The position numbers and the translations under genes are program-made. DNA of 64,000 bases from Macrostomum lignano (taxonomy: Eukaryota). The stretch is taken from the NCBI GenBank assembly GCA_002269645.1, contig NIVC01000876.1:1-64000 (forward strand), given 5' to 3'. The notes under the pieces are model-generated. The model made no database searches. It saw only the letters and a list, made by a program, of their open reading frames with translations, and had not been told where the DNA came from. Below, one piece after another: positions 7,458 through 60,913 of the stretch. Numbering within the stretch: the first letter of the stretch is position 1; each line of letters starts with the position of its first letter.

Positions 7458-9385
7458 GGACAGTGGCGCCAATCTTAGAGACGGTGGCGCCAATATTAAA
7501 GACAGTGGCGCCCTTCTTAGAGACAGTGGCGCCAATCTTAGAGACAGTGGCGTCAATCTTAGAGACAGTGGCGCCAATCCTATAGAAAGTGGCACCAATC
7601 CTATAGAAAGTGGCACCAATCCTATAGAAAGTGGCACCAATATTAGAGACACTGTCGCCAATCTTAGAGACAGTGGCGCCAATCTTAGAGACACTGTCGC
7701 CAATCTTAGAGACAGTGGCGCCAATCTTAGAGACACTGTCGCCAATCTTAGAGACAGTGGCGCCAATATTAGAGACAGTGGCGCCAATCTTAGAGACAGT
7801 GGCGCCAATATTAGAGACAGTGGCGCCAATATTAGAGACAGTGGCGCCAATATTAGAGACAGTGGCGCCAATCTTAGAGACAGTGGCGCCAATCTTAGAG
7901 ACAGTGGCGCCAATCTTAGAGACAGTGGCGCCAATCTTAGAGACAGTGGCGCCAATCTTAGAGACAGTGGCGCCAATCTTAGAGACAGTGGCGCCAATCT
8001 TAGAGACAGCGGCGCCAATCTTAGAGACAGTGGCGCTAATCTTAGAGACAGTGGCGCCAATCCTATAGAAAGTGGCACCAATCCTATAGAAAGTGGCACC
8101 AATCCTATAGAAAGTGGCACCAATCTTAGAGACAGTGGCGCCAATCTTAGAGACAGTGGCGCCCTTCTTAGAGACGGTGGCGCCAATATAAAAGACAGTG
8201 GCGCCAATCTTAGAGACAGTGGCGCCAATCTTAGAGACAGCGGCGCCAATCTTAGAGACTGGCGCCAATATTAAAGACAGTGGCGCCCTTCTTAGAGACA
8301 GCGGCGCCAATCTTAGAGACAGTGGCGCCAATATTAAAGACAGTGGCACCCTTCTTAGAGACAGCGGCGCCAATCTTAGAGACAGTGGCGCCAATCTTAA
8401 AGACAGTGGCGCCAATCTTAGAGACAGTGGCGCCAATCTTAGAGACAGTGGCGCTAATCTTAGAGACAGTGGCGCCAATCTTAGAGACAGTGGCGCCAAT
8501 ATTAAAGACAATGGCGCCCTTCTTAGAGACAGCGGCGCCAATCTTAGAGACAGTGGCGCCAATCTTAGAGACAGTGGCACCCTTCTTAGAGACAGTGGCG
8601 CCAATCTTAGAGACAGTGGCGCCAATCTTAGAGACAGTGGCGCCAATCTTAGAGACAGTGGCACCCTTCTTAGAGACAGCGGCGCCAATCTTATAGACAG
8701 TGGCGCCAATCTTAGAGACATTGGCGCCAATATTTGAGACAGTGGCGCCAATCTTATAGACAGTGGTGCCAATCTTATAGACAGTGGCGCCAATCTTATA
8801 GACAGTGGTGCCAATCTTATAGACAGCGGTGCCAATCTTAGAGACAGTGGCGCCAATATTAAAGACAGTGGCGCCAATCTTAGAGACAGTGGCGCCAATA
8901 TTAAAGACAGTGGCGCCAATCTTAAAGACAGTGGCGCCAATCTTAGAGACAGTGGCGCCAATCTTAGAGACAGTGGCGCTAATCTTAGAGACAGTGGTGC
9001 CAATCTTAGAGACAGTGGCGCCAATCTTAGAGACAGTGGCGCCCTTCTTAGAGACAGCGGCGCCAATCTTAGAGACAGTGGCGCCCTTCTTAAAGACAGC
9101 GGCGCCAATCTTAGAGACAGTGGCGCCAATCTTAGAGACAGTGGCGCCCTTCTTAAAGACAGCGGCGCCAATCTTAGAGACAGTGGCGCCAATCTTAGAG
9201 ACACTGTCGCCAATCTTAGAGACAGTGGCGCCAATATTAGAGACAGTGGCGCCAATATTAAAGACAGTGGCGCCAATCTTAGAGACAGGGGCGCCAATCT
9301 TAGAGACAGTGGCGCCCTTCTTAGAGACAGTGGCGCCAATCTTAGAGACAGTGGCGCCAATCTTAGAGACAGGGGCGCCAATCTC
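7458..9385. repeat. 21-bp minisatellite (AGTGGCGCCAATCTTAGAGAC)n, ~90 copies, filling a cpo intron
   Basis: Unit read directly; source of the LAPLSLR, ETVAPIL and LRDSGAN ORFs. Confidence 0.97.
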
Positions 9386-10727: not shown

Positions 10728-12228
<1,501 letters not shown>

Positions 12229-22273: not shown

Positions 22274-22324
22274 CTGTTGGAGTGAGATCAAATCGCTTTC
22301 ATGAGTTCGGATTTCCGACATCCG

Positions 22325-24495
22325 ATTCTAGACAATTTATTCCCGGTTCCCGGCATTTGATTCCAGATTCCGGACAATTTACTCCCGATTCCCGACACTT
22401 TATTCCCGGTTCCCCACACTTTGTTCCCGATTCCCGACAATTTATTCCCGATTCCCGACACTTTATTCCCGATTCCCGGCATTTGATTCCAGATTCCGGA
22501 CACTTTATTCCCGGTTCCGGCTCTATACTCCCGATTCCCCACACTTTACTCCCGATTCCTGACACTTTATTCCTGATTCCCGGCACTTTACTCCCGATTC
22601 CCGGCACTTTACTCCCGATTCCTGGCACTTTACTCCCGATTCCTGGCACTTTACTCCCGATTCCTGACACTTTACACTCCCGATTCCCCACACTTTACTC
22701 CCGATTCCCCACACTTTACTCCCGATTCCCGACACTTTATTCCTGATTCCCGGCACTTTACTCCCGATTCCCGGCACTTTACTCCCGATTCCTGGCACTT
22801 TACTCCCGATTCCTGGCACTTTACTCCCGATTCCTGACACTTTACACTCCCGATTCCCGACACTTTACTCCCGATTCCTGACACTTTACTCCCGATTCCG
22901 GACACTTTACACTCCCGATTCCCGACACTTTACTCCCGATTCCTGACACTTTGCTCCCGGTTCCCGACACTTTGCTCCCGGTTCCCGACACTTTACTCCC
23001 GGTTCCCGACATTTGATTCCCGATTCCGGACAATTTACTCCCGATTCCCCACACTTTATTCCCGATTCCCGGCGCTTTACTCCCGATTCCTGACACTTTA
23101 CTCCCGATTCCTGACACTTTACTCCCGATTCCTGACACTTTACTCCCGATTCCTGACACTTTACACTCCCGATTCCTGACACTTTACTCCCGATTCCTGA
23201 CACTTTACACTCCCGATTCCCGACACTTTACTCCCGATTCCTGACACTTTGCTCCCGGTTCCCGACACTTTACTCCCGGTTCCCGACATTTGATTCCCGA
23301 TTCCGGACAATTTACTCCCGATTCCCCACACTTTACTCCCGATTCCTGACACTTTACACTCCCGATTCCCGACACTTTACTCCCGATTCCTGACACTTTG
23401 CTCCCGGTTCCCGACACTTTACTCCCGATTCCTGACACTTTGCTCCCGGTTCCCGACACTTTACTCCCGATTCCTAACACTTTGCTCCCGGTTCCCGACA
23501 CTTTACTCCCGGTTCCCCACACTTTACTCCCGATTCCTGACACTTTACACTCCCGATTCCCGACACTTTATTCCCGATTTCCGACACTTTACTCCCGATT
23601 CCCCACACTTTATTCCCGATTCCTGACACTTTACTCCCGATTCCCCACACTTTATTCCCGATTCCCCACACTTTACTCCCGATTCCTGACACTTTACTCC
23701 CGATTCCTGACACTTTACTCCCGGTTCCTGACACTTTACACTCCCGATTCCTGACACTTTACTCCCGATTCCTGACACTTTACTCCCGATTCCTGACACT
23801 TTACTCCCGATTCCTGACACTTTACTCCCGATTCCGGACACTTTACTCCCGATTCCTGACACTTTACTCCCGATTCCTGACACTTTACTCCCGATTCCTG
23901 ACACTTTACTCCTGATTCCTGACACTTTACTCCCGATTCCTGACACTTTACTCCCGATTCCTGACACTTTACACTCCCGATTCCTGACACTTTACTCCCG
24001 ATTCCTGACACTTTACTCCCGATTCCTGACACTTTACACTCCCGATTCCCGACACTTTACTCCCGATTCCCCACACTTTACTCCCAATTCCCCACACTTT
24101 ATTCCCGATTTCCGACACTTTACTCCCGATTCCCCACACTTTATTCCCGATTTCCGACACTTTACTCCCGATTCCCCACACTTTACTCCCGATTCCCGAC
24201 ACTTTATTCCCGATTTCCGACACTTTACTCCCGATTCCCCACACTTTACTCCCAATTCCCCACACTTTATTCCCGATTCCCGACACTTTACTCCCAATTC
24301 CCCACACTTTATTCCCGATTCCCGACACTTTACTCCCGATTCCCCACACTTTATTCCCGATTCCCGACACTTTATTCCCAATTCCCCACACTTTATTCCC
24401 GATTCCCGACACTTTACTCCCAATTCCCCACACTTTATTCCCGATTCCCGACACTTTACTCCCAATTCCCCACACTTTATTCCCGATTCCCGACT
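22325..24495. repeat. ~2.2-kb minisatellite, ~19-21-bp variants of (CCCGATTCC[T/C]GACACTTTACT)n, filling almost the whole 2.29-kb intron
   Basis: Unit read directly; source of the many SGIGSKV and CQESGVK ORFs. Confidence 0.97.
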
Positions 24496-30829: not shown

Positions 30830-33560
30830 CTCTCCATTCTCTCCGATACTGTTTCCGTTCTCTCTCCGTTCTCTCTTTCATTCTCTCTCTCATTCTCTCT
30901 CCCATTCTCTCTCCCATTCTCTCTCTCCCATTCTCTCTCATTCTCTCTCCCATTCTCTCTCCCATTCTCTCTCCCATTCTCTCTCCCATTCTCTCTCTCC
31001 CATTCTCTCTCATTCTCTCTCCCATTCTCTCTCCCATCTCTATCCCATTCTCTCTCTCCCATTCTCTCTCCCATTCTCTCTCTCATTCTCTCTCTCATTC
31101 TCTCTCTCATTCTCTCTCTCATTCTCTCTCTCATTCTCTCTCTCATTCTCTCTCTCATTCTCTCTCCCATTCTCTCTCCCATTCTCTCTCTCCCATTCTC
31201 TCTCATTCTCTCTCCCATTCTCTCTCCCATTCTCTCTCCCATTCTCTCTCCCATTCTCTCTCTCCCATTCTCTCTCCCATTCTCTCTCCCATTCTCTCTC
31301 CCATTCTCTCTCTCCCATTCTCTCTCCCATTCTCTCTCTCCCATTCTCTCTCCCATTCTCTCTCCCATTCTCTCTCCCATTCTCTCTCCCATTCTCTCTC
31401 TCCCATTCTCTCTCATTCTCTTTCCCATTCTCTCTCCCATCTCTATCCCATTCTCTCTCTCCCATTCTCTCTCCCATTCTCTCTCTCATTCTCTCTCTCA
31501 TTCTCTCTCTCATTCTCTCTCTCATTCTCTCTCTCATTCTCTCTCTCATTCTCTCTCTCATTCTCTCTCTCTCTCTCCATTCTCTCTACCATTCTCTCTC
31601 TCATTCTCTCTCCCATTCTCTCTCCCATTCTCTCTCCCGTTCTCTCTCCCATTCTCTCTCCCATTCTCTCTCCCATTCTCTCTCCCATTCTCTCTCTCCC
31701 ATTCTCTCTCCCATTCTCTCTCCCATTCTCTCTCCCATTCTCTCTCTCCCATTCTCTCTCCCATTCTCTCTCTCCCATTCTCTCTCCCATTCTCTCTCCC
31801 ATTCTCTCTCCCATTCTCTCTCCCATTCTCTCTCTCCCATTCTCTCTCATTCTCTTTCCCATTCTCTCTCCCATCTCTATCCCATTCTCTCTCTCCCATT
31901 CTCTCTCCCATTCTCTCTCTCATTCTCTCTCTCATTCTCTCTCTCATTCTCTCTCTCATTCTCTCTCTCATTCTCTCTCTCATTCTCTCTCTCATTCTCT
32001 CTCTCTCTCCATTCTCTCTCCCATTCTCTCTCTCATTCTCTCTCCCATTCTCTCTCCCATTCTCTCTCCCATTCTCTCTCCCATTCTCTCTCCCATTCTC
32101 TCTCCCATTCTCTCTCCCATTCTCTCTCTCCCATTCTCTCTCATTCTCTCTCCCATTCTCTCTCCCCCATTTTCTCTCTCCCATTCTTTCTCTCATTCTC
32201 CCTCTCCCATTCTCTCTCCCATTCTCTCTCCCATCTCTCTCCCATTCTCTCTCCCATCTCTCTCCCATTCTCTCTCCCATTCTCTCTCCCATCTCTCTCC
32301 CATTCTCTCTCCCATTCTCTCTCCCATCTCTCTCCCATCTCTCTCCCACTCTCTCCCCCATTCTCTCTCTCATTCTCTCTCTCCCATTCTCTCTCCCATC
32401 TCTCTCCCATTCTCTCTCCCATTCTGTCTCTCATTCTCTCTCTCCCATTCTCTCTCCTATTCTCTCCCCCATTCTCTCTCCCCCATTTTCTCTCTCCCAT
32501 TCTCTCTCTCATTCTCTCTCTCCCATTCTCTCTCTCATTCTCTCTCTCCCATTCTCTCTCTCATTCTCTCTCTCATTCTCTCTCTCATTCTCTCTCTCCC
32601 ATTCTCTCTCTCATTCTCTTTCTCATTCTCTCTCTCTCCCATTCTCTCTCTCATTCTCTCTCTCCCTTCTCTCTCTCATTCTCTCTCTCATTCTCTCTCT
32701 CCCATTCTCTCCCCCATCTCTCTCCCATTCTCTCTCCCATTCTGTCTCTCATTCTCTCTCTCCCATTCTCTCTCCTATTCTCTCCCCCATTCTCTCTCCC
32801 CCATTTTCTCTCTCCCATTCTTTCTCTCATTCTCTCTCTCTCCCATTCTCTCTCTCATTCTCTCTCTCCCATTCTCTCTCTCATTCTCTCTCTCCCATTC
32901 TCTCTCTCATTCTCTCTCTCCCATTCTCTCTCTCATTCTCTCTCTCATTCTCTCTCTCATTCTCTCTCTCCCATTCTCTCTCTCATTCTCTCTCTCATTC
33001 TCTCTCTCTCCCATTCTCTCTCTCATTCTCTCTCTCCCCTTCTCTCTCTCATTCTCTCTCTCATTCTCTCTCTCCCATTCTCTCCCCCATCTCTCTCCCA
33101 TTCTCTCTCCCATTCTGTCTCTCATTCTCTCTCTCCCATTCTCTCTCCTATTCTCTCCCCCATTCTCTCTCCCCCATTTTCTCTCTCCCATTCTTTCTCT
33201 CATTCTCTCTCTCTCCCATTCTCTCTCTCATTCTCTCTCTCCCATTCTCTCTCTCATTCTCTCTCTCCCATTCTCTCTCTCATTCTCTCTCTCCCATTCT
33301 CTCTCTCATTCTCTCTCTCATTCTCTCTCTCATTCTCTCTCTCCCATTCTCTCTCTCATTCTCTCTCTCATTCTCTCTCTCCCATTCTCTCTCTCCCATT
33401 CTCTCTCTCATTCTCTCTCTCTCCCATTCTCTTCCCCATTCTCTCTCTCCCATTCTCTTCCCCATTCTCTCTCTCCCATTCTCTCTCCCATTCTCTTTCC
33501 CATTCTCTCTCTCTGTCTCTTCATCTCCACCTCTCTCCCCTCTCTCCCTCTCTCTTACCC
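30830..33560. repeat. ~2.7-kb pyrimidine-rich array of CATT(CT)n[CC] units (~12-16 bp)
   Basis: Read directly; plus strand almost only C/T. Confidence 0.97.
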
Positions 33561-41270: not shown

Positions 41271-41750
<480 letters not shown>

Positions 41751-42810
41751 GGCGTATGCGCACAAGATAAGGTAAACGGATGTAACTTATGTTTGCCTCA
41801 TCAGCATAAGCATTTGATCGATTTCATATCTCCATTTTGGAGGAAAAAAACTGTTTTAGCGGACATTCCGGTGTTATATCAGCTTGATCTACCGAGTAGC
41901 CCCGTTAAAACAAAGGATTTCAAGTAACTGCAAGGAACTTGTTTAAAAGTCGATAGAAAGACTGTTTAGTATGTCCGCTGCATATTAAATTAAGTTTAAT
42001 GGTTCGCCTGGAAATGAAAAATTAAGGCCTAATTTTTATTTGAAATTATCGAGCCAATTACATGGGACCCATTGGTAAAGTTGCCGTCTAGAAACAAGGA
42101 ACTAAATTACTAAAACGAATCTTCAGCTATTACCATCACCGCTGACAATCAGGTAAGTAACTAGGGTAGATTTTTCAATTTTTATCGACGAACAATCCCT
42201 ATTGCTTAACCATTAGGTTGGGGACGATGTAAATTTATAAAATTTGATGTTTGCATTATAAGATATTGCAGTGGTTAGCGACGTTAGAAACAATTTCAAA
42301 ATTTTGTGGAAATATTTTTTTGTTTAGTAAGACCCATATTTATGATTATTGAAAAATTCAATTACTAAGTTTAAACTGCATATCCTTTCAAGATTTATTC
42401 TTAATTTTTTGAAAACAAAATAGCTGTTTTGAAATTGCCAAAAATATTTCGCGTGACCGCAATGAATTTATAAGAAAGTCTATTAGTATAAAAATTGTTA
42501 TCTTTTTTTGTTAGCTTTTATACTCTGTATAAATGTAACAGGGAATCTTTTTTACGAAAATCGCGCTTTTGAATTTGCTCTACTGCATGAATATCAGAAA
42601 TATTTGGTATATTCTATATATGTATGAAAATTTTAGGAATTTAATTTTTTGTATATGGATTATTACTGGCATCATTCGCCAATAATACACATGTTGCAGC
42701 GAACCTATGAATCTTATGGACCTCTATTATATTATTTAGAAACACAGGAATTAAAACCCTGCCTTCATTTTTTATTCCAGAGCTCACAGTCAAGCGTTTT
42801 CTGCTGTGCG

Positions 42811-43903
42811 ATGACTGAACCGAGAAGGAGCGATTGCGCCATCTGCATGGCTGAAGATGTTGAACAAATTCGGAAGTGCCTTGAAACCGGATCTGAAACT
42901 CCCGACTGTGACTGTGACGGTCAAGGGGAGCCGCCACTTTTAAAGGCTTCCCGCCTTGGTCGAGTGAGTGTGTCCCAAGTTCTGTTAGAGTTTGGAGCCC
43001 AAATTGACGCTCCTTGTCGGGAAGACTCGAGCACTGCTCTAATTGCCGCAGTAGCGGGCGGGCATCTCGAGCTCGCACAGCTTCTGATTCAAAGGGGCGC
43101 CGATTTGAATCGACAACGAAAAGACGGAAAATTTGCTTTAATGCTAGCTGTCGAGGCTAAAAGCTTCGAATTAATGAAGCTTCTTCTTCAGACGAAGGGT
43201 GTCAAAATGGGACTTACCGATATCAGAGGCAAGTCTCTATTATCCTATGCTATCGATGCGAACTGTCTCAAAACGGCACAGCTGCTTATCGAACATGGCG
43301 CCGATGTGAATGGACCTTACGATCGCGCAAGGCCTCTGTTACCTGTCAGCATGTACATGGATGGACGAGAAGAAATTTTCCACGCTCTCCTTAACGCTGG
43401 TGCAGACGTCAATGCCATGGACAATAATGGCCGGACCGCTCTAGAAGTTGCCGTTATAAAGGGCAACCGGGAAGCCGTAAAAGAGTTGCTTCAGGCTGGC
43501 TCAGATGCCAATAGGATAGACAGTCTAATGGACACTACCTGTCTGATTGAGGTCGCTGTTCGGGGCTTCAAAGACATTTTTCACGACCTGCTAACTCATG
43601 GGGCACGCATCGACCTAGCCAACGCTACGGGTCGAACCCCGCTGATTGTTGCGGCAGACAAGGGGCACCCGAGCTGCTCAAGGAATTGACACTGCTTGAC
43701 AAGGACTTGGAGCGAATGGACTACAGCGGTGACACGGCACTATCAAACGCAGTGAAAAATGGCCACTTTCACGCTGTGAAAGTTTTGGTTGAGGCTGGAG
43801 CCAAAATCGGACACGTAAACAAAGACGGGCTCAGCTGCGTGCAAATTGCTGATAGAAATGGACACACCGAGATCAAGACCTATTTGATGGAGAAAGCAGC
43901 TGA
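42811..43903 (+). CDS. Ankyrin-repeat exon (~10 repeats) of the ankyrin-Mab-21/cGLR protein; 1-bp frameshift at the C-run 43668-43670
   Basis: Canonical ANK repeats (STALIAAVAGGHLELAQLLIQRGAD, GRTALEVAVIKGN, GDTALSNAVKNGH); adding one C restores GHPELLKEL and joins the two ORFs; acceptor at 42780; GA|GTAAGT donor at 43903. Confidence 0.9.
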
Positions 43904-44232
43904 GTAAGTCGTACTGATTTAGCCCTAGTCTCTTCTTGATTAGTTTCTTCTTTGATCGCGGTTGGTGCTTTGATAGCCTTTCGATGAAACGCGGAACCGT
44001 CCATGCAACTTTCAACTGCTCATTGCCTCCCCTTTATACTCTGCTTGCTTTTTCCGACCCCTTGCTGCTTGTGATAACATTATTTTTTATTGAGTTATTT
44101 GGTGAGTGCAATGAAAGTTAAGCAATGCAATCCAATAGTTAAAAACTTCAAGACTTTGGTCGAGTACACTGAAATTATACAACTAAATAAGTAAAGAGAG
44201 ACGATAGAGCGTGCTTAATACTGCTCTTACAG

Positions 44233-44310
44233 ATTCGGGATGCCTCTGGCTGAAATGCCCAAAGACCCGAGTGTCTTGTCTAGTGATGAAGACGTTGCTA
44301 CCGAGTACAT
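44233..44310 (+). CDS. Linker exon of the ankyrin-cGLR protein (FGMPLAEMPKDPSVLSSDEDVATEY)
   Basis: ttacag acceptor phase 2 matches the ANK donor; AT|GTAAGT donor phase 2 matches 44408. Confidence 0.8.
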
Positions 44311-44407
44311 GTAAGTACTTTAAGGAAGATGCTATCTGATATGAGAAAACATTTACAGAAATTAATAATAAAAGGTGTGCTGTTTTCATAATTTTTTGCC
44401 TCCGCAG

Positions 44408-44751
44408 GCCTCTAGAACCAAAAGAACTCAGTGAGCAGCTCAGCGAAGCTATGGAACGGGCCGGGTTCACCTCAGAGAGAGCCAGATTACAGATTGGGCT
44501 GGCCCTTGTGCTGGAGGAAATGGCCCGAGAGATGTGGCTGGACCAACGACACATGTGTGGAAGTTACGCAGAGGGCTGGGCCAACAACATCCGGCAAGTA
44601 AATGGCACTGTTGGAAAGGGGTCCGACGTCGATTGGACTCTGCTGGCGTCTGATGGTCAAAAGTTTCACTTTGAAGGAATGTGCAAATGTGCAGATCCTG
44701 CCGGAGGCTACTGTCGGCTGGAGGAGGGTCACGTCGTTGTTCCAGACGCTG
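44408..44751 (+). CDS. Mab-21/cGAS-like nucleotidyltransferase, N-lobe exon (GSYAEG...SDVD)
   Basis: ccgcag acceptor, G|GTACGT donor phase 1; GS motif and DxD catalytic pair of the cGAS/Mab-21 NTase fold. Confidence 0.88.
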
Positions 44752-44919
44752 GTACGTGTCTCGTGGTTTTTTATTTGGATTTCATCTGTTGTAAAAAGTG
44801 AATAAAGCTGAGGGCCGTCAATCAGCTAGTAAAGAAAATCAGAATTAGAGCACTCACTGAGAGGCTTGCCATACCTTATAATGCATATATTTAACTGAAC
44901 ACCTCTCTCTCTGACGCAA

Positions 44920-47900
44920 CAACCCCACCATGTTCAATGAGGGGCGGGGGACGCCAGGCGTACACTTAACGGCACTCCACAAAGAAGGTGCAGGCAGGTA
45001 GGAACACAACTAATCATAAAAATCACCCTACATGCAATGATGCTTCATCATTGCAGCACTTGAAAAACATTGATGTTCGGAAAAGAAACTCACTATGACC
45101 CCCAATAGTTAAACGAAACGAATCGCACAAACAACGAAACGCAGCTAAACTGCAACAAAGATTGATAAATCATGCCAGCTAGCATGGAATTCAAGCATCT
45201 CCTGGGTCCGCGGCCTGGCCTTTGCACGACTCGAGACCTTGACGATCTCACTGCTCAGTCTCGTCCCGGATACACCGCCTCCAAAATGCCAGTAAACCAG
45301 GTGAGCCTCGATGGCCAGCTTCGCCTTTCGCCAGGACGATGTCGCTGACCGTCGCCTCTCGGATCACGCCGAGCAGATTTTCGCACAGTTTGTCAGATAT
45401 TGCCGCTCCCAACAGTTCCGGAAGGAGTGAAGTCTGACGCGCATTTGCATTAGCAGTTTTGGCAACGGTAGCAGAAGATCCGAGGCAGACAGAAGAAGGT
45501 TGCGCCGTAAGCCGCTGTAACAACAGAAAGGGTGCTGGTGTCAGAATTTCTTCCTTGTGATCAGCATCCACGTAGAGCAAAGGGCGGCTGTTGAGCACCG
45601 CCTCCACCTCCATTTGTACTGTTCGTCCAATGTAGGACTTGCATTCAGAAGGGTCTTGCGCAGCTTGATTTCCTTCATCAATTGCTTCCAGAAGCCTCCT
45701 TGCCAGGGTGAGCACTCGATGATGGACTTCTACGTGATCTTTCATGTCGAGCAGAACTCCTGGACTTTTTGACTCTTTGACTCTTTGACTCTTTTGAGGC
45801 TTTGGCAAATGTCTTAGAATTATCGCTGATAAGACTAGAGATGCCTCTCCTCGCACGAATCTCCTTAGGACTCTCAGGCAGGTCTCGGTTGTTAAATCCT
45901 TCAACAGTTCCAGATGAAGCGCTCGCGTTGCTGCGCAGGTGAACACCAAGATGTAGCCCTTCTCGACGGCAGTATCTTCTCTCAGCTTGACCGGATCACA
46001 GAAGTCAAGCCCGCTCCACTCGAACGCACTCGAACTGGTCAGCTCCTATGAGGATGTTGATCTCTGGATGCTGCTCGCTGCCGATGTCCCAGTCTGTCAG
46101 ATCCAGATGTGGGCAGTGATCGCTGCGCAAGCTGTTGACAACGAGCTGATGAGAGCAGATGTAGAGGGGGCCGTAGCCCAGCGGTAGCGCAGCTGCTCTG
46201 GTGTGCCAGCGACCCAGGCTCGATTCCAAGTGCAGTCACATTAATTTGGGGCTGAATTGGAATCTCGGCTTGGCTCTGCTCGTGCAATTAACGGCCTTGA
46301 GAGCCACCCCCCCCCCAAGGCGCAGTGAAGTGTGCATGCCTAACGATAAATAAAGTTAGGGCCGCTGTACACTCCTGTGTGAGTGTGTGCCTGCGTACGT
46401 ATCCGCGCGCTTGTATGCCTGCTCAGGGGAGTCGGCGGAATGGGCAGTAATGCCTCTCGCCGGTTGTGTGACAATGTCGCTTAAAGTGCGCCAGGGTGCA
46501 CACAACCCCCTGCCTCTAATAAAAAAAAGAGCAGATGTATGGTACTGTGTAATGCGTAATGTGAAACGGTTGACTAGCTTATGAAGTTGGAACTCGACCT
46601 CCGTTTATAGGACCTTAGGCTGTGTGCCTCCGAATTTCATTACTTTCATTGTGTCTTAGCCGATCACACTAAATTCCGCTCAGCTACGCCCGACATAATA
46701 AACGAACGGTTACTCACAGAGTCGAAGAGACTTCTAACCCCTATTTCACTGCTGCCACCTTGTGAAATCAGCATAGCTCCAGCAGTAGGACAAATCACTG
46801 TCTGGCCTTGGTAACCATCGCCATAGTCTTCACTTCGTGAATTTTGACACCCTGCGCGGCCGACTGTTCGGGTTCTTCTTTCCTGAACCCACCGTATCGA
46901 TGATGCATCAAGGAATCTTGTCTGCCGGCCGTTGCTGTAGCTGTTCCACTCGGGTAGAGCAGACTGGGATGATGCTTCAACTTGTAGAAGCCACACTACT
47001 TCTTTTGATAACAAGTCGTGGGGGCATGGCTTTTGGTTTGAGGCAACTGAAGCAGTGTCTTTGTTCTTTTAAGAATCGAAACTTAGTGAACACATCCACC
47101 AGTAGATCCCAACTTTTTGGAGTATGTTCAGCATCACAGTAAGGACACATGTTTCTGACTTTGGCGACCTTCGTAGCCTTAGGCTGCACAGCAGATACCG
47201 CGGATTCCTTTGTTTTCCTGTGTTGAACTCTCGCTCCGAGAGCAGCTTCCTCCTCAAATAGGATTTCTAGGTCAAGGTCAAGGCATTGAGGAATTTTTTA
47301 ATCAACACTAGGCCGCTTCAATTTGTCACCTGTTATTGACTGCTACCATGGGAAGAGCGTATGGAAACTATCCTGGCAGTTCTAAGCATCTCACTTCCGG
47401 CAAGTTCGTCAGCAAGTTGAACAGCAAGATGGTCTCGTATGAAGCAACATCACCCCGAGATTCTCCAGGCTGCAGACATTGCCACTGGCTTGATCGTAGA
47501 AGTTTCTCAGGTGGTGGACCGAAGCACCTAAGTAGATCATCGGGGAAAACTTCGCCAGATGATCGCGCACGGCTCCACTCCAGGATCCAAACCGTCGTTG
47601 CAGGTTATCGCAATCTTGTAGTTCTCAGCCGTGATGTTAAGGCCAGCGATCAAATTCTTGACTTCTCCTGAAAGGCACGATTGCAGGTAGCTGAACTTGT
47701 CAACAACGCTGAGGCTCGAGTTGTCGTGGTTGCTGGAACTGAAGCGGTCCCAGAATGAAGTCCATTGAGTCCGATCTCCACCGAATGCTGGTGGCGGCAG
47801 TATAGGCAGCCTGATGGCCAGCGGAGTCGCTAAAGCAGCACGCTAAAGCATGCGGCTTTCTCACTCGACCTGAAGAATCTGTAGTCGCTCGGCGAGACTT

Positions 47901-48230
47901 GAAATCATCTCTCCAGCCAGCAACTCGAACTCCATCGTCTTTTCCACTTACTCTTGGAGTGCATTCTCGACGAGCTCAACGGACAGTTCTTCTTCCACTG
48001 CCAGCAGCTGTTGCTTCTTGAGGCACAGTGCTTTCAGTTTGCTTTCGATATCTTCCTCAGCAGCCTATGGCTCGAGCTGGTCTTGGCCTTTCTGGGCCAT
48101 TCTGGTGACTGTCGCTCACAATACTCAACGCTTTCTGGAGTCCATGCTAGGCTGACGAGAAACCGCTTTGTCACTGTAGGACTCTATCGCTCTGTAAGAT
48201 GGTTTGCTTAGTTGATTGCGTGTGCGCACG
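44920..48230 (-). mobile_element. Decayed BEL/Pao LTR retrotransposon (gag, Zn knuckles, protease, integrase; RT/RNase H deleted) in the cGLR intron; ends approximate
   Basis: DUF1759-like gag (RLPILPPPAFGGDRTQWTSFWDRF...DKFSYL), CxxC motifs, protease SLFDS and INILIGAD, integrase GLDFC..KGYILVFTCAATRALHLEL..DLTTE..LRRF; stops and frameshifts. Confidence 0.9.
46164..46527 (+). mobile_element. tRNA-derived SINE (family 1) nested in the BEL/Pao protease region, with 12-bp TSD AGAGCAGATGTA
   Basis: A and B boxes, A-tail; TSD at 46152-46163 and 46528-46539. Confidence 0.93.
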
Positions 48231-48479
48231 TTCACTAGCTCTTATGTACATTTGCTCGCTGTACAATGATAATATATAAGTGAATGCCTTGGCGCCCTGG
48301 GCAGCCAAGAGTTGGTCTACGCCTTAAGCCAATTTCTCGTTTTCGCTTGTTCTTACAGCTCTATACCTTCACTTTATTGTGATTTTAGTTCAGGCACTAT
48401 CTATGACAGCAACACTTACATGTCTAGGAAAGCATAAAGAGAATGATATATTTATAACTATCATTTAAAATTTATCCAG

Positions 48480-49864
48480 GCAATCAGCCAGCCCATTCGG
48501 ACCGAGCTACCGGTGCGCGACCCGCGGCAGACTTTTGCACCGCATTTCCATGTTGCTGCTTTCCCGAGCCAGCTGATTTCCTAGGCAGACTGCCGCCAAA
48601 TATTCGCGACGAGTTAAGCAAAGAAACCGAAATTCACCTGGTTGTCGCTACCCGGCCAGGACACAAAAATGAGTACAGGGCTAGTTACAGTTTTCTCGAG
48701 AAACGATTTATTCGCCAGTTTAACGACACACAGGGACGGCTATTTGTCCTGCTTAAGTACCTTATTAAGAAAGTGATGGCAAAAAAGCTGGGAGTTGCAG
48801 GTCTAAAGTCCTATCACGCCAAGACGTTAACCTTCTTTATGATTGGTCGCGAGGACGAGTCCATCTGGTCTAGCGAAAACTTGTTTCACTTGACAGAAAA
48901 ATCCATGGATTTACTGGTGGAACTTCTCGATTCCATTGAACGCCCGGATGTACTGATGCCACACTTCTTTTTGAAGGACGGGCCGTTGTTTATTAAAGGT
49001 GCGGACTCAGAGGGACACCGTAAGCAGCAGATTCGGCGAGCAGCTATCGAGATGAGGCAGAACTTACAGCTGCATCTGCAAAGTTATGTAAGATCCGTGC
49101 TAAAGCCACTGGATTCCGATAATTTCTACTTCCATCCTTTCTTGCTGTCGGAGATTGGTATAGAGACAGTCAAACCGGACGACATTGCAAAGTACCACAG
49201 GCTGTACGACTACATTTATGTTACGCTAATGGAGATGGTGGAACAGGACTTGCCGCTTGAGCAGTATCTGAGAGACATCGCTAGAATTCCGGATCACGCA
49301 TACAGTGCTAGGGTTTGCCTGACAGCTTTGGCTTTGTGGAAGTTTGGGAAACACGACTCTGTAACGGAAGTTCTAAAAGATTCACTGGAGCATCGAGCAT
49401 CTCGCTTCGTGCCATTCACTGTCTGTTCAGATGCCCAAGAGGCCAAGTTATTGATCTGGCAGCATTTGCAAGAGACTGATGCCGCGTGGCGCTTTGTTTT
49501 CGCAGCCAAGACTCTCCCAGTGTTCACCTTCCTGCCCGACAGACTGCGACGACTCTTTCCTGCCGAGATGCCCGACTTCAAGCTTTTTTTCTACATGAAC
49601 TTCAATGCTCTGCTGAAATGCCTGAGCGCTGTTGCCCTGCCAAACCTATTTTCAGTTTCAGACTGGTTCTCTGAACTTCAGCTTGATCCTGACTTTGAGG
49701 AGCTGTACGCCTTTTGCGAGTTCTGCCGGGATCCGAAGGCACTGAGAGCAGCACACAGGAGGATGTGTCAAGTCGTTCGCAAGCCGATTCACCCTCTGGA
49801 GAAAGCGAAGTTAGAGCTGGTTGAGAAGCGATGCTCTGAGTTGCAAGCTGAACAACACGAATGA
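48480..49864 (+). CDS. Mab-21/cGLR C-lobe and helical C-terminal extension, last exon
   Basis: ttatccag acceptor phase 1; ADFCTAFPC (third acidic residue), HLV, RASYSFLEK, LLKYLIK, LKSYHAKT, W..ENL, LMPHFF are Mab-21 hallmarks; open to TGA at 49862-49864. Confidence 0.92.
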
Positions 49865-52099: not shown

Positions 52100-55050
52100 T
52101 TACAGTACGTGTACTAGCTAGTACGTCCGTACATGCACCCTTTGCAACATTTCTACAATTGGTGCTGCCAAAGCTGCTGGTGCGGACCTCTGCTCGTGTG
52201 GAAGCTCTCACGGCCATGGAGGGATCCAAAGCAGGGGGGGGGAGTGCTGGCCAAACCACCAAAGCGCACTTATGCGGCTATGGCCAAGAGGCAGCCGGCC
52301 CTGATCATCCAAGGCCGGGAGACGCCTCTTACGGCCGAACAGCTCAACCTTATCTGGCGCAGGTTGGACTCCCACCTGGTCAAGATGGCCTTGAGCGGTA
52401 CCGCTATTCAAGTCCAAAAGACGAAATTCGAGGACCAAGCCCTTCATATCCAGCCCGCCGACAGCCAGTCTAGGCAACAGCTCCTCGAGCTGCTGAAAGC
52501 CTTCGGCTGGACATCATGCTCTCACCAGCTCTTTCCCACGTGCCGCACCGCAGCTAGGCCCACTGGACCACTCTCCGGGCGGACAGATCCTGGCTTCGAC
52601 CATCATTACTAGAGAGAGGACGGCTCGCTCCGCAAAATCATTCTCTCCTTTCAAGTAAACGGGACCTGACAAGATTTATCCTGCCTTCCTTCATGAGGCA
52701 GTTAAAAATGGCCTCCTCTGCAACCTCTTCAAGGCCAGCATTACCCTCGGGTACGTGCCAAAAGCCTGGCAAGAGGCCACGGTAGTCTTCATACCCAAGC
52801 CAGGGAAGGGAGACTATCACTCCGCCAAAGCTTACCGCCCTATCAGTCTGAGACGTCTTTCTTTTTCAAACTGATGAAACAGCTGGTGCTCTGGCGCCTC
52901 CTCGTAGAGCTGAGGAACTCCCCGCTCTCCCCTAATCAGCACGCCTTTCGTCCTGGACGTTCCATCGAAAGTGCGCTTCACGCCATTGTCGACAAGCTGG
53001 AGCGCGCCGTGCTTGGCAGTGGATACGCGCTGTCGCTTTTCCTCGACTTTGATGGTGTGTTCAATAATGTGCTCTTTGAAGCCTTTAAGCGGGCCCTGGA
53101 ATCCCAGGGCACGCATGAGCACCTTACCCGCTGGATCATGTACATGGTCTCCCATCGTACTGCCACCTCGCACCTCCTTGGGAGACTCACGCTCCGTGGA
53201 AGTCCAGAAAGGCGGACCGCAAGGTGGAGTCCTCAGCCTGATTCTCTGGAATTTAGTCATGGACGAGCTGCTTTGCAGCCCGCATCCGGACCCTGTTATG
53301 AAGGTCGGCTATGCGGACGATGTTACTGCCACTGTGGCTGGACCATCACCCGCGGTCCTCAGGGACCTCCTTCAAGCCTTCATCCACCGCGCACATAGCT
53401 GCAGTCTCAGGTTCTCTGAGTCTAAAACCGTGGCAATCATGTTCACCAGCCGCCGAAACTGGAGGATTGAACCGCTCTCCCTCAATGACAAACCCGTTGC
53501 CATGGAGAAACAAACCAGATGTCTGGGCGTCACCCTCGACCACAGGTCAGGTTGAGCTGAACCCCGCACGTCCAAACCAAAGCCCGCAAAGCTCTCGCGA
53601 CTCTCGCGCTGATCCGCAGAGCTTTCGGCGCTACCTGGGGCCTCACCCCCGCCGCCTCTGGTGGATTTACACTGCCATTGTTAGACCGGCCATCTCCTTC
53701 TCCGGCTTCATTTGGAACAGTGCCCTAGAGGTGAAAGGGGTTTTTGAGGTTCTAAATAGGGTGCAAGGCCGCACTTGTCGAGCTATCATGAGCGCGGCTC
53801 CCTCTACGCCCTTCGCTGGCATGAACTCCTTCTTGGACATTCCCCCCTCGACCTCTTTGTTAGAGGGGAGGCAATGAAAACCACCCGCCGTCTGCTTGAC
53901 GCGGATATCCAGAAGCAGTTCACCTTCAGAAAGCGGAACCTCCGGCCGCATGGCGACCTCAGCCTGCGAGACCTGGAAGCAGCGAGAGGCCTGCTGACCC
54001 TCTCGGACGGAATCCCGTCCACGCTCTGCGCATGCCCTCCGCTCAAATTCAAAACCAGCATTCCACCACGTCCATTCCAGAAAGAGACAACTGGAAACCC
54101 CATGAAATCCAATGCTTCACTGACGGGTCCCAAATCAACTCCGCCTCTGGCTACGGCTACGGCATCGTGTCTGGAGGGAGAACTGTGGCGACCTTCTCCC
54201 AACACACCGGCACCTGCTTCACCGTCTTCCAGAACGAAATTCTCGCCATTAGCTCCTGCACCATGGAGCTGTACAATCAGCGCATCTGGGGGAAGGAGAT
54301 TACCCTCCACTCGGACAGTCAAGCGGCGATTCACGCCCTTGAGCGCACCACCACCTGCTCGCGTACAGTCCTCGACTGCATCGGGCAGCTCAACCGCTTA
54401 GGCGCCTCTAACAAGGTGTCCCTAAGGTGGATCCCTGGGCATTCGGGCCACCCCGGCAACGAGTTTTGGCCGATTGCCTGGCCAACTCCCTGGCTTCTAA
54501 GCACAGGGAGAGGTGGGCTAACGCCCCCGACTGCCGGCAATCCCGCGCGGCTGTCCCCTGTCCTTCCTCCGCCCTGCGCAGGGCCCTGCTTGGACTCAAC
54601 CGCAGGGACCTCACGGTGACCATGGCCCTCTCGGGTCATGGCTGTTTTGCCAGGCATCGTCACCTCCAGGGAAAAAATCGCAGTGAGGAATGCCCATTCT
54701 CCCTCTCCAGTGTCGAGAATGCGGAGCACTTTATCTGTGAATGCCCCGCCTTTACTCAGGACAGGCTCACCTACCTCGGCCCAAACCCGGACCTCTCCGA
54801 CGTTTTCAGGCCCGAGAATCTCTGCCAGCTCTTGCGCTACCTAAGGGCTACAGGCGAGCGACAATCCACCTCCTGGACTCTCCGGAGGGGGACCGAGCTG
54901 TGGACACCGGCACCACCGGAACTCCCTGCATGACACCGCAGCACTATAGCTGCCCGTGGTCTCCAGGGGTTAGCGAAATGCGCGGCAACGCCTCCTCGCT
55001 GTTTCCGGACGCACGGAGCCCGGTTGCAGCTAAGTCAAGCTAAGTCAACA
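52100..55050 (+). mobile_element. Decayed non-LTR retrotransposon, LOA/R1-type (ORF1 fragment, RT, RNase H, C-terminal Cys/His motif); most of the AP endonuclease missing
   Basis: RT motifs YRPISL, QHAFRPGRS, LFLDF, PQGGVLS, GYADD; RNase [29 protein letters not shown]; [12 protein letters not shown]; many frameshifts; TAAGTCAAGC tandem tail near 55031-55048. Confidence 0.93.
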
Positions 55051-59826: not shown

Positions 59827-60376
59827 GTAAGCGGATTTTGCTGTTTTGAGTCATCACCTGCCCAATATGATGTATTTTCATTATATTACATGTATGTGTC
59901 ATGTCACGTGACTCGTTAAATTGTATGTTTATTTCTATGAAAAATCCCACAGTTTCGGGGCATAAATTAAGGCTTTGGCTTTTGTGCGAAAATCACACAT
60001 ATCGCTTTCATGGACTCTCATAAGTGCCTTTCGTTCTTATATCCACTCATCCTCCACCACCACTATACTTAATTAGTTATTTCTAGGTAGCTATGTGACT
60101 TATTTTAGAAGAATCGGCTCAACCAATTCTTATGAAACTTGCACCGTCCGATCATACATCATAAATGACTCCGACTTAAATTACGTCATGGCACAATAGT
60201 TCATTGGCTTCTGGCAGCATAGCACAAGACTGCATTGCAGCTTAGAATTCAATTAATTAGTTTCCCATTTATAGTTTTCATCTAAAGCTTTTTTGAGCCA
60301 TTTCCGAAATAGTCAAAATTTCTGTCCAGTTTGAGTTTTTCAATGATTCCGTCGTCGTTCACAATAAACTTCACAG

Positions 60377-60798
60377 CGCCCACAGCCAACCATCACCCGG
60401 CTGGCGAATTTATCTATCCAGTTTCCTTTCAATTGCTGCCAACGGCTCCGGCATCCTTCGAAAGCAGCATAGGGAACATCCGTTACTACATCCAGGCGAG
60501 AATGGACCGGTCGTGGAATAAGAGCAATATGGTCAAGAAGTTTTTTACTGTTATCCGCGATTTTGATTTGAATTTGTGTCGGCCGGAAGAAATCGGACCA
60601 TACAACGCTACCGGAGAGTTTAATGTCACCTGTAATGCCTGTATCTGTTTTAATTGCAGCAGTTGCTACGGCAAAGTTCTAGTCCGCGTCGAGCTGCCTA
60701 AGAAGGCCTTCGTGCCAGGGGAGCACGTGCATGTTACTGGGGAGATTTCCAATTTTAGCAAGACCGCCTTGCAGAGTGTTAAGCTGGAGATTTATCAG
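60377..60798 (+). CDS. Alpha-arrestin exon 3 (AGEFIYPVSFQL..APASFESSIGNIRYYI...KKAFVPGE)
   Basis: Hallmark P.SFE...G.IRY and K.afvPGE motifs; splice sites in phase. Confidence 0.93.
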
Positions 60799-60913
60799 GT
60801 ACCAAGTTACATATTGCCTATACCGCCTTGGTTGCTTAAAGGCTGACTGGTGTCCTGAGTGGCTGAGGAGCAAGTTCAACACTAAACGTTTTGATTTCCA
60901 TAAAATATTTTAG

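What the first reader, a model, noticed from the sequence alone, without database searches (positions are those of the whole stretch)
42811..49864. Hidden ankyrin-repeat / cGAS-like (Mab-21, cGLR) fusion receptor, ~966 aa
The ORF track shows an ankyrin ORF and two unrelated ORFs. All splice junctions are phase-compatible: 43903|GTAAGT to 44233, 44310|GTAAGT to 44408, and 44751|GTACGT to 48480. With one C restored at 43668-70 they give 2901 nt of continuous CDS. The NTase keeps GS, DxD (SDVD) and a candidate third Asp (ADFCTAF), so it is predicted to be catalytically competent, unlike developmental MAB21L proteins. Established: cGLRs are animal pattern-recognition enzymes that make cyclic dinucleotides, and accessory-domain fusions occur in some invertebrates. 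Inference: ~10 ANK repeats could form a protein-sensing or autoinhibitory module, so the trigger might be a protein rather than a nucleic acid. To my knowledge such a system is little described in flatworm-like animals.
Basis: partly seen in the sequence, partly recalled or inferred. Interest (0 to 1): 0.88.

Follow-up and report, generated by a model that had tools for sequence, protein, structure and literature searches.

The report
Flatworm ankyrin–cGAS-like receptor gene, frameshifted
This is a real four-exon gene of the flatworm Macrostomum lignano that joins about ten ankyrin repeats to a cGAS-like enzyme with an intact-looking active site. It belongs to a large gene family already catalogued in this species, and this copy has a one-base frameshift in the assembly.

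Summary
The window is the first 64 kb of Macrostomum lignano contig NIVC01000876.1. GenBank protein PAA75531.1 (664 aa, RNA-seq-guided) uses the same three introns.

The product has about ten ankyrin repeats, an acidic linker, a cGAS/Mab21 nucleotidyltransferase core, and a 235-aa C-terminal domain with no known structural relative. The AlphaFold model (pLDDT 93, pTM 0.92) matches only cGAS, cGLR, MAB21L1 and MB21D2 structures. The motifs GS, DxD and the third Asp align with bivalve cGLRs and are kept in 36-41 of 41 divergent paralogues.

It is not new as a kind. Li et al. 2023 catalogued ankyrin-cGLR fusions, including M. lignano ones, and cloned five M. lignano paralogues. No flatworm enzyme is among their 15 characterised active enzymes.

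The 966-aa protein needs a base that the Illumina-polished assembly lacks. This copy may therefore be a young pseudogene or an assembly error.

The core is acidic (pI 6.3), which fits a non-nucleic-acid trigger only weakly. Whether M. lignano has a STING receptor is unknown.

Verdict: a new member of a known kind, of modest interest.

The parts
42811..43903 (+). Exon 1. It holds the start codon and an N-terminal cap plus about 10 ankyrin repeats (aa 1-365 of the repaired model). The sequence ttttattccag|AG at 42770-42782 just upstream looks like a possible (trans-)splice acceptor; this is inference only.
   Evidence: Pfam Ank_2 E 1.1e-49 and Ank E 2.7e-43. Repeats were parsed by eye from the translation. 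UniProt model P0004 starts at the same ATG.
43668..43670 (+). Frameshift site, a CCC run inside ankyrin repeat 8 (GRTPLIVAADKGH|PELLKEL). As assembled, the frame ends at the TGA at 43687-43689. One extra base restores a canonical repeat.
   Evidence: P0001 starts only at the ATG at 43716, after the shift. P0004 bridges the same site with an implausible 32-nt GT-AG 'intron' (43631-43662) that deletes half a repeat.
43904..44232 (+). Intron 1 (329 nt, GTAAGT...ACAG).
   Evidence: exon blocks of P0001.
44233..44310 (+). Exon 2 (78 nt, in frame), coding an acidic linker. The UniProt model P0004 skips it, so it may be a cassette exon.
   Evidence: Linker pI is 4.05.
44311..44407 (+). Intron 2 (97 nt). 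Its position is shared with paralogue P0005.
44408..44751 (+). Exon 3, the first half of the NTase N-lobe. It holds GS (G442 S443, 44559-44564) and DxD (D464 at 44625-44627, D466 at 44631-44633).
   Evidence: In the model, GS follows strand 43-47 and DxD lies on strand 70-76.
44752..48479 (+). Intron 3 (3728 nt, phase 1, GTACGT...CCAG). It splits the active site. Its position and phase are conserved in paralogue P0005, where the intron is 2.5 kb.
45248..47900 (-). Decayed BEL/Pao-type LTR-retroelement remnant inside intron 3. It has a gag-like DUF1759 piece and a piece that looks by eye like an integrase core (no Pfam hit), with many stops and frameshifts. No LTR pair was found. The limits are approximate.
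   Evidence: Six-frame reading. PF03564 E 3.7e-18. No repeats found.
48480..49864 (+). Exon 4. It holds the third catalytic Asp (D523, 48530-48532), the rest of the cGLR core with Mab-21_C (48743-48997), the family-specific C-terminal domain (49157-49861) and the TGA stop (49862-49864).

Best explanation
The locus is gene Mlig030220.g1 of the free-living flatworm Macrostomum lignano. It is one member of a large, so far M. lignano-only radiation of ankyrin-repeat/cGAS-like receptor (cGLR) genes.

Shown:
- There are four exons. The product is an N-terminal solenoid of about 10 ANK repeats, an acidic linker, a cGAS/Mab21 nucleotidyltransferase core with GS, DxD and a third Asp, and a 235-aa C-terminal alpha/beta domain modelled as one rigid body with the core.
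- The active site is assembled only after a 3.7-kb intron holding a dead retroelement is spliced out.

Inferred mechanism: like other cGLRs, the core is held inactive until a ligand binds, and then it makes a cyclic di- or oligonucleotide second messenger. The ANK solenoid most likely recruits or senses a protein partner, or autoinhibits the enzyme. Because this copy's core is acidic, its ligand is less likely to be long dsDNA or dsRNA. The receptor for the signal is unknown.

In the assembly this copy has a 1-nt frameshift in ANK repeat 8. The full 966-aa protein therefore exists only if that is an assembly error. Otherwise this copy is a very young pseudogene, or yields at most a 664-aa form with two ANK repeats.
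For: Identity and gene structure:
- P0001 (PAA75531.1) is 100% identical over exons 2-4.
- Public gene models are RNA-seq-guided, built with StringTie/TACO and TransDecoder (PMC5730564).
- Intron positions are shared with paralogue P0005.

Fold:
- AF2 gives pLDDT 93.1 and pTM 0.92 for 572 aa.
- All 50 listed Foldseek PDB hits are cGAS, Cv-cGLR1, Sp-cGLR1, MAB21L1 or MB21D2. The best has E 1.2e-8, probability 1.00 and target-normalised TM about 0.55.
- PDB profile searches hit only cGAS/cGLR chains at E up to 0.001.

Active site:
- hhalign against bivalve cGLRs from Li et al. Table S3 gives probability 98.8% and E 9.8e-17, with GS, DxD and the third Asp aligned residue for residue.
- Across 41 representatives clustered at 50% identity or less, G is kept in 41, S in 40, D in 39, D in 38 and the third D in 36.

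Family:
- 79 representatives score E below 1e-30, and 14 of 14 sampled are M. lignano.
- 28 of 34 proteins scanned carry ANK repeats and 29 of 34 carry Mab-21_C.
- M. lignano ANK-cGLRs are listed, and five were cloned, in Li et al. 2023.

Ligand hint: core pI is 6.35, against above 8.5 for dsDNA/dsRNA-sensing cGLRs (PMC9980059).
Against: - The assembled sequence does not encode the 966-aa protein, because a stop follows the frameshift at 43687-43689.
- The assembly was Pilon-polished with Illumina DNA and RNA-seq reads. A model from the older ML2 assembly needs a fake 32-nt intron at the same spot. The frameshift may therefore be real.
- No intact copy was found in the protein collection.
- Pfam's NTase-core model PF03281 does not hit, and target-normalised TM is only about 0.55.
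- No enzymatic activity is known for any flatworm cGLR. The 15 characterised active enzymes of Li et al. come from insects, anemones, molluscs, hydras and corals.
- cGAS and STING are reported lost in Schistosoma and Schmidtea. STING was not examined in M. lignano.
- pI is a crude proxy for ligand type.
Confidence: 0.7

Rival explanations
1. Young pseudogene or split gene. The 1-nt deletion is real in the DV1 line, so no full-length ANK-cGLR is made. The transcript carries a premature stop, and at most a 292-aa ANK protein is produced. A 664-aa protein with 2 ANK repeats plus the cGLR would additionally need reinitiation at the ATG at 43716.
For: - The frameshift survived Canu plus Pilon polishing with Illumina DNA and RNA-seq reads.
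- The ML2-derived model P0004 had to skip 32 nt at the same site.
- Only one copy (g1) exists, whereas most paralogue clusters have 2-7 near-identical copies.
- Many truncated family members exist, as expected for birth-and-death evolution of an immune gene family.
Against: - Everything else is intact: 292 open codons of well-formed ANK repeats lie upstream, and there is no other stop or shift in 2.9 kb.
- The catalytic residues are kept.
- The site is a short homopolymer in a PacBio-based assembly of a neopolyploid genome, where polishing can fail. ML2 and Mlig_3_7 share the same PacBio reads, so they are not independent.
Confidence: 0.45
2. Two separate genes: an ANK-only gene ending near 43689 or 43907, and an unrelated cGLR gene starting at 44233 or later.
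For: The raw ORF track shows separate ORFs, and there is a stop at 43687-43689.
Against: - GenBank's RNA-seq-guided CDS runs from the last two ANK repeats through the cGLR in one frame.
- 28 of 34 proteins scanned carry ANK repeats, which lie N-terminal to the core in the family alignment.
- The ANK/linker intron position (intron 2) is conserved in P0005.
Confidence: 0.04
3. A non-enzymatic Mab21-type protein that acts as a scaffold or developmental factor, like MAB21L1/2, and only resembles cGAS in fold.
For: - MAB21L1 and MB21D2 are among the structural hits.
- PF03281 gives no hit.
- No M. lignano enzyme is among the 15 characterised active cGLRs of the screen.
Against: - The catalytic triad is conserved in 36-41 of 41 representatives that share 50% identity or less, which is hard to explain without catalysis.
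- Sequence profiles hit cGAS/cGLR chains at E of about 1e-6, but MAB21L1 only at E 0.27.
- A lineage-specific radiation with pI from 5.5 to 9.3 is typical of immune receptors, not of a conserved developmental gene.
Confidence: 0.1
4. A conventional nucleic-acid-sensing cGLR. dsRNA or dsDNA binds the core as in cGAS or Dm-cGLR1, and the ANK repeats only mediate localisation or downstream partner binding.
For: - All cGLRs with a known ligand sense dsDNA or dsRNA (PMC9980059).
- 12 of 41 family cores have pI above 8.5.
Against: - This copy's core has pI 6.35 and net charge -3. The whole protein has pI 5.67.
- The M. lignano catalytic domains tested with a nucleic-acid pool are not among the reported characterised active enzymes.
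Confidence: 0.25

Closest known systems
M. lignano ANK-cGLR paralogues catalogued by Li et al. 2023 (for example PAA86972.1, PAA68676.1, PAA93208.1, PAA45980.1, PAA57558.1; Tables S2 and S3 of PMC9980059)
   Same: They come from the same species and share the architecture of N-terminal ANK repeats, cGLR core and C-terminal extension. They share the motifs GS...SD[IV]D...RPxxD...RVS[FT]xFxE[KR]. They are 25-43% identical to this gene's core.
   Different: This locus (PAA75531.1) was not found in the stored parts of their tables, some of which are truncated. It is annotated only as a 664-aa fragment and carries a frameshift. Its core is more acidic than many paralogues.
Bivalve cGLR clade (Crassostrea and Mizuhopecten cGLRs of the Li et al. 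screen; Mercenaria XP_053407825.1)
   Same: Profile-profile homology covers almost the whole core (probability 98.8%, E 9.8e-17), with all three catalytic motifs aligned. A clam protein (Mercenaria) is the only named non-Macrostomum relative among those sampled.
   Different: Identity is about 21%. The flatworm family has a 10-residue insertion between GS and DxD. It lacks the bivalve HGPC motif (it has NQPA instead), and it adds N-terminal ANK repeats and a different C-terminal domain.
Vertebrate cGAS (for example 4k9b, 6edc) and Cv-cGLR1 (8gjw) / Sp-cGLR1 (8gjy)
   Same: They share the same bilobed Mab21/cGAS NTase fold (Foldseek E 1e-8 to 4e-6, probability 1.00). Sequence similarity in the C-lobe is significant (E of about 1e-6 to 1e-7).
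   Different: Identity is only 14-17% and target-normalised TM about 0.55. No N-lobe sequence match is detectable by HMM. The core is acidic rather than basic. ANK and C-terminal domains are added. Whether a Zn-thumb equivalent exists is unknown.
[quoted passage not shown] 2023, Fig. 4C)
   Same: They show the same idea of a cGLR core fused to a protein-interaction repeat module.
   Different: They are from a different phylum. A coral clade tested here shows no profile-level similarity beyond the RxSFS motif. The fusions are probably independent.
MAB21L1 / MB21D2
   Same: They share the fold.
   Different: MAB21L1 is a sequence-level hit only at E 0.27. Li et al. state that Mab21L1/2/3 lack a predicted functional active site, whereas this family keeps one.

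Membership tests
cGAS-like receptors (cGLR; Mab21-family NTases with a complete active site, as defined by Li et al. 2023) | Bilobed cGAS/Mab21 nucleotidyltransferase fold | tested here: met
   AF2 gives pLDDT 93.1 and pTM 0.92. All 50 listed Foldseek PDB hits are cGAS, cGLR, MAB21L1 or MB21D2, with probability 1.00 and best E 1.2e-8. Mab-21_C PF20266 scores above its cut-off.
cGAS-like receptors (cGLR) | Complete catalytic motif: G[S/G], [D/E]h[D/E]h and a third Asp | tested here: met
   G442-S443, D464-V-D466 and D523 align with GS, SDMD and the Asp of EIDIAF in bivalve cGLRs (hhalign). They sit on the expected strands of the model and are conserved in 36-41 of 41 paralogue representatives. 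A 3-D superposition of side chains could not be inspected.
cGAS-like receptors (cGLR) | Ligand-activated synthesis of a cyclic nucleotide second messenger | not testable with these tools
   This needs recombinant protein and a TLC or LC-MS assay. Five paralogous cores were in the Li et al. screen, but no flatworm enzyme is among the 15 characterised active enzymes.
cGAS-like receptors (cGLR) | Basic primary ligand-binding surface (pI above 8.5), typical of dsDNA/dsRNA-sensing members | tested here: not met
   Core pI is 6.35 and the full protein 5.67. This feature defines the nucleic-acid-sensing subset, not the family. Li et al. describe acidic cGLRs as well.
cGAS-like receptors (cGLR) | A downstream STING (or other) receptor in the same genome | not tested
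   No eukaryotic genome collection could be searched here. cGAS and STING are reported absent from Schistosoma and Schmidtea. M. lignano is not in Table S5 of Li et al..
Ankyrin-repeat proteins | Tandem repeats of about 33 residues matching the ANK profile | tested here: met
   Ank_2 E 1.1e-49, Ank E 2.7e-43 (7 stretches) and Ank_4 (9 stretches). About 10 repeats plus a cap were parsed.
Intact protein-coding gene (as opposed to pseudogene) | Uninterrupted reading frame across all exons in the genome sequence | tested here: not met
   The -1 frameshift at 43668-43670 gives a stop at 43687-43689. Whether it is real cannot be decided without reads.

The most novel reading that the evidence does not exclude
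The M. lignano ANK-cGLRs may be a flatworm-specific family of pattern-recognition enzymes. The collection holds at least 40 divergent full-length clusters, all sampled ones from this species. Their ankyrin solenoids, rather than a basic groove, would read out protein or other non-nucleic-acid ligands. Their structurally unmatched 235-aa C-terminal domain would couple the nucleotide signal to a STING-independent effector, in a phylum where cGAS and STING are reported lost from the species examined (Schistosoma, Schmidtea).
Probability: 0.12. Interest if true: 0.75.

Novelty: new member of a known kind. Interest (0 to 1): 0.3.

Why it matters
Flatworms are usually described as having lost cGAS and STING. 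M. lignano, an early-branching flatworm in which transgenesis is established, is the exception, with a large private radiation of ankyrin-cGLR genes.

A correctly assembled full-length model is useful raw material for asking what non-canonical cGLRs sense and what reads their signal when STING may be missing. That model should show the ANK solenoid, the active site split by an intron, and the unmatched C-terminal domain.

For this particular locus the practical message is annotation. The public 664-aa and 468-aa models are two halves of one ANK-cGLR gene, broken by a single-base frameshift that should be checked against reads.

Tried and rejected
- The PDB profile search with the ANK-containing alignment was swamped by ankyrin and DARPin hits. 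I repeated it with core-only alignments.
- The search for homologous proteins with the 4-sequence core profile returned only 2 proteins. The search with the repaired ANK/linker junction returned one unrelated ANK protein and not even the self hits. Both are uninformative, so no conclusion about an intact copy can be drawn from them.
- Exact-sequence look-ups found nothing. The upstream ANK ORF from two start codons and P0004 are not on record. There is therefore no transcript-level evidence on the frameshift.
- hhalign of the family against a coral cGLR clade found no real match (probability 5%).
- hhalign of the C-terminal domain against bivalve cGLRs found nothing.
- Fold searches of the C-terminal domain against PDB and BFVD gave no hit at E of 0.001 or below, only weak TPR-like resemblances.
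- A search for LTRs or direct repeats around the intronic retroelement found none.
- Rfam found nothing in the window.
- The 32-nt 'intron' of UniProt model P0004 (43631-43662) is rejected as a gene-predictor workaround. It removes helix 1 of ANK repeat 8 and is too short for a typical metazoan intron.
- PAA75531.1 and five paralogue accessions were not found in the stored supplements of Li et al., but two of those files are truncated. Absence is not shown.
Full report
**Where the window comes from.** A protein search with the product of exons 2-4 returned a 100% identical, 100% covering hit: 'hypothetical protein BOX15_Mlig030220g1 [Macrostomum lignano]' (P0001 = PAA75531.1, 664 aa). Its contig is NIVC01000876.1 of assembly GCA_002269645.1 (Mlig_3_7). 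The gene lies at record positions 43716-49864, so window coordinates equal record coordinates.

**The observation.**
- Exon 1 is 42811-43903, exon 2 is 44233-44310, exon 3 is 44408-44751 and exon 4 is 48480-49864.
- All three donors are GTAAGT or GTACGT, and all three acceptors are pyrimidine-rich ...AG.
- The exons sum to 2900 nt. Adding one C to the CCC run at 43668-43670 gives 2901 nt and a 966-codon open frame.
- As assembled, the frame shifts inside an ankyrin repeat and stops at 43687-43689.
That CDS starts at the first ATG after the frameshift (43716, MDYSGD...), so it keeps only the last two ANK repeats.
It hops over the frameshift with a 32-nt GT-AG 'intron' (43631-43662) that deletes RTPLIVAADKGH. 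It also skips exon 2 and stops at the end of exon 3.
- The Mlig_3_7 paper states that gene models come from genome-guided RNA-seq assembly (StringTie/TACO) with TransDecoder ORFs (PMC5730564). The splice junctions thus have transcript support, although I could not see reads myself.

**Independent support for the long intron.**
- In paralogue P0005 (903 aa, 31% identical) an intron lies at the homologous codon in the same phase. In P0005, AEYS-G|gtgagt...cag|A makes the Glu of YSE|SHPA. Here, PDA-G|gtacgt...cag|GC makes the Gly of DAG|NQPA. The P0005 intron is also long, at 2.5 kb.
- Intron 2 is shared as well.
- The protein alignment runs across the exon 3/4 join without a gap.
- Intron 3 here contains the wreck of a BEL/Pao-type LTR retroelement on the opposite strand. 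It has a gag-like DUF1759 piece (E 3.7e-18) and a piece that looks by eye like an integrase core (no Pfam hit), with many stops and no LTR pair. It is harmless to the host gene if spliced out.

**What the protein is.**
- The N-terminal 365 residues give very strong ankyrin hits (Ank_2 E 1.1e-49). They parse into an N-cap plus about ten repeats.
- A 29-residue acidic linker follows (pI 4.05).
- In the remaining 572 residues Pfam sees only Mab-21_C (PF20266, 26.5-27.6 bits against a cut-off of 24.1), and not the NTase model PF03281.
- I therefore built a family alignment (below) and predicted the structure. The result was mean pLDDT 93.1 and pTM 0.92, with no segment below 50.
- In Foldseek against the PDB, every one of the 50 listed hits is cGAS, oyster Cv-cGLR1 (8gjw), coral Sp-cGLR1 (8gjy), MAB21L1 (5eom/5eog) or MB21D2 (7lt1). 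All have probability 1.00, the best E is 1.2e-8, about 330-390 columns are aligned, and target-normalised TM is about 0.55.
- Core-only sequence profiles hit only cGAS/cGLR chains in the PDB at E up to 0.001 (best E 2.6e-7 to 7e-7). MAB21L1 scores only E 0.27.

**The active site.**
- A profile-profile alignment of 20 family cores against four bivalve cGLRs taken from Table S3 of Li et al. gives probability 98.8% and E 9.8e-17 over 292 columns. It pairs GS with GS, SDVD with SDMD, and D523 with the Asp of EIDIAFSF. It also pairs YRASYSFLEK with WRISFAKAEK.
- In the model, GS follows the first core strand, DxD lies on the next strand (70-76), and the third Asp lies on strand 127-136. This is the Pol-beta-type NTase arrangement.
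- Among 41 family representatives that share 50% identity or less, the five positions are kept in 41, 40, 39, 38 and 36 sequences.
- I could not superpose side chains, because the tools do not expose coordinates. 'Catalytically competent' therefore remains a well-supported prediction, not a demonstration.
- One feature is worth noting. GS and DxD are encoded in exon 3 (44559-44633) and the third Asp in exon 4 (48530-48532), on either side of the 3.7-kb intron.

**The C-terminal domain.**
- Residues 732-966 are conserved across the family. They are predicted with high confidence both within the 572-aa model (pTM 0.92 suggests one rigid body with the core) and alone (pLDDT 92.0, pTM 0.90).
- The domain is helical with a small sheet. 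It has no significant match in the PDB (best E 0.056, weak TPR-like resemblance) or in BFVD. It has no Pfam family and no similarity to the bivalve sequences. Its role is unknown.

**The family.**
- A full HMMER scan of 1.84 billion cluster representatives with the core profile found 1299 hits at E of 0.001 or below, and 79 at E of 1e-30 or below.
- 41 non-redundant proteins match the whole core. All 14 top-tier clusters that I looked up are from M. lignano.
- The next tier (E of about 1e-15 to 1e-21) consists of unnamed ENA and Logan assemblies and a clam, Mercenaria.
- 28 of the 34 proteins scanned carry ANK repeats and 29 of 34 carry Mab-21_C. In the family alignment the ANK repeats lie N-terminal to the core. 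ANK-cGLR is thus the family's standard architecture, not an accident of this locus.

**What is already known.**
- Li et al. [quoted passage not shown] - Their Table S2 lists M. lignano cGLRs with N-terminal Ank_2 hits: PAA67649, PAA58690, PAA68676 and PAA86972.
- Their Table S3 shows five M. lignano catalytic domains cloned for the screen (#89-93). These include close relatives of P0003 and the cluster of P0040.
[quoted passage not shown] No flatworm enzyme has a reported product or ligand.
- PAA75531.1 itself was not found in the stored tables, but two of them are truncated.
- Elsewhere, cGAS and STING are reported as lost in Schistosoma (PMC4117786) and not identifiable in Schmidtea (PMC13563047). 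Table S5 of Li et al. lists six platyhelminths, and the rows I read (four cestodes) show 0 cGLR and 0 STING. It does not include M. lignano.

**The frameshift.** This is the weak point of the '966-aa receptor'.
- For an assembly error: the site is a short homopolymer in a PacBio/Canu assembly of a neopolyploid genome. Everything else in the gene is intact, and the repaired repeat is canonical.
- For a real mutation: the assembly was polished with Pilon using Illumina DNA and RNA-seq reads. The earlier ML2-based gene model needed a workaround at the same base, though both assemblies share the PacBio data. Only a single copy (g1) of this gene exists, whereas most paralogue clusters have 2-7 near-identical copies. 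Truncated paralogues are also common.
- I put the odds near even.

**Mechanism.**
- Shown: the architecture, the fold, the conserved catalytic motifs, and membership of a lineage-specific radiation.
- Inferred from the cGLR literature: the core is activated by ligand binding and makes a cyclic di- or oligonucleotide.
- On the trigger: Li et al. report that dsDNA/dsRNA-sensing cGLRs have pI above 8.5, and that acidic cGLRs probably bind something else. This core has pI 6.35 (net charge -3) and the whole protein 5.67. Family cores range from 5.5 to 9.3.
- The role of the ANK solenoid (sensor, autoinhibitor or adaptor) and the identity of the signal's receptor are open.

**Verdict.** The claim of a hidden or little-described system is only partly right. 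This is a new, possibly broken, member of a catalogued but functionally uncharacterised family. I did not need to refer any step.

Noticed in passing
window 44752-48479 (minus strand, roughly 45248-47900): Intron 3 of the gene holds a decayed BEL/Pao-type LTR-retroelement remnant. It has a gag-like DUF1759 piece (E 3.7e-18) and a piece that looks by eye like an integrase core (no Pfam hit), broken by many stops and frameshifts. No LTR pair was detected.
   Followed up: partly
window 1-42000: The upstream 42 kb is dominated by tandem repeats and satellites. Examples are a 21-mer x92 at 7459-9384, ATAG x375 at 10728-12224, a 21-mer x103 at 22322-24494, a 12-mer x214 at 30858-33511, and AGAT x120 at 41272-41750, about 1 kb upstream of the gene's ATG.
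   Followed up: no
window 52133-54933 (+): A GC-rich stretch has overlapping, frameshifted ORFs with reverse transcriptase (PF00078, E 1.7e-11) and RNase H (PF00075, E 2.7e-11). It is another decayed retrotransposon.
   Followed up: partly
window 60331-60846 (+): An ORF matches Arrestin_N (E 9.6e-14) and Arrestin_C (E 4e-10). It is probably an exon of an arrestin-domain gene downstream of the cGLR gene.
   Followed up: no
window 44670-44740 and 48540-48650 (aa ~480-560 of the model): His and Cys residues are invariant or nearly invariant across the family in the N-lobe: the H of FHFEG, CxC, GH, the CC after the third Asp, and the H of IHLV. They could form a structural Zn site, perhaps an analogue of the cGAS Zn-thumb. 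The geometry could not be inspected.
   Followed up: no
window 44233-44310: Exon 2 (78 nt, in frame) is included in the GenBank model but skipped in the UniProt model. It may be a cassette exon coding part of the acidic linker.
   Followed up: no
L002 (NIVC01001690.1) and protein clusters: Most ANK-cGLR paralogues exist as 2-7 near-identical copies (g1, g2...) of very different annotated lengths, for example 936, 936, 372 and 334 aa. This fits the duplicated DV1 karyotype plus frequent truncation or mis-annotation. The window's gene has only one copy.
   Followed up: partly
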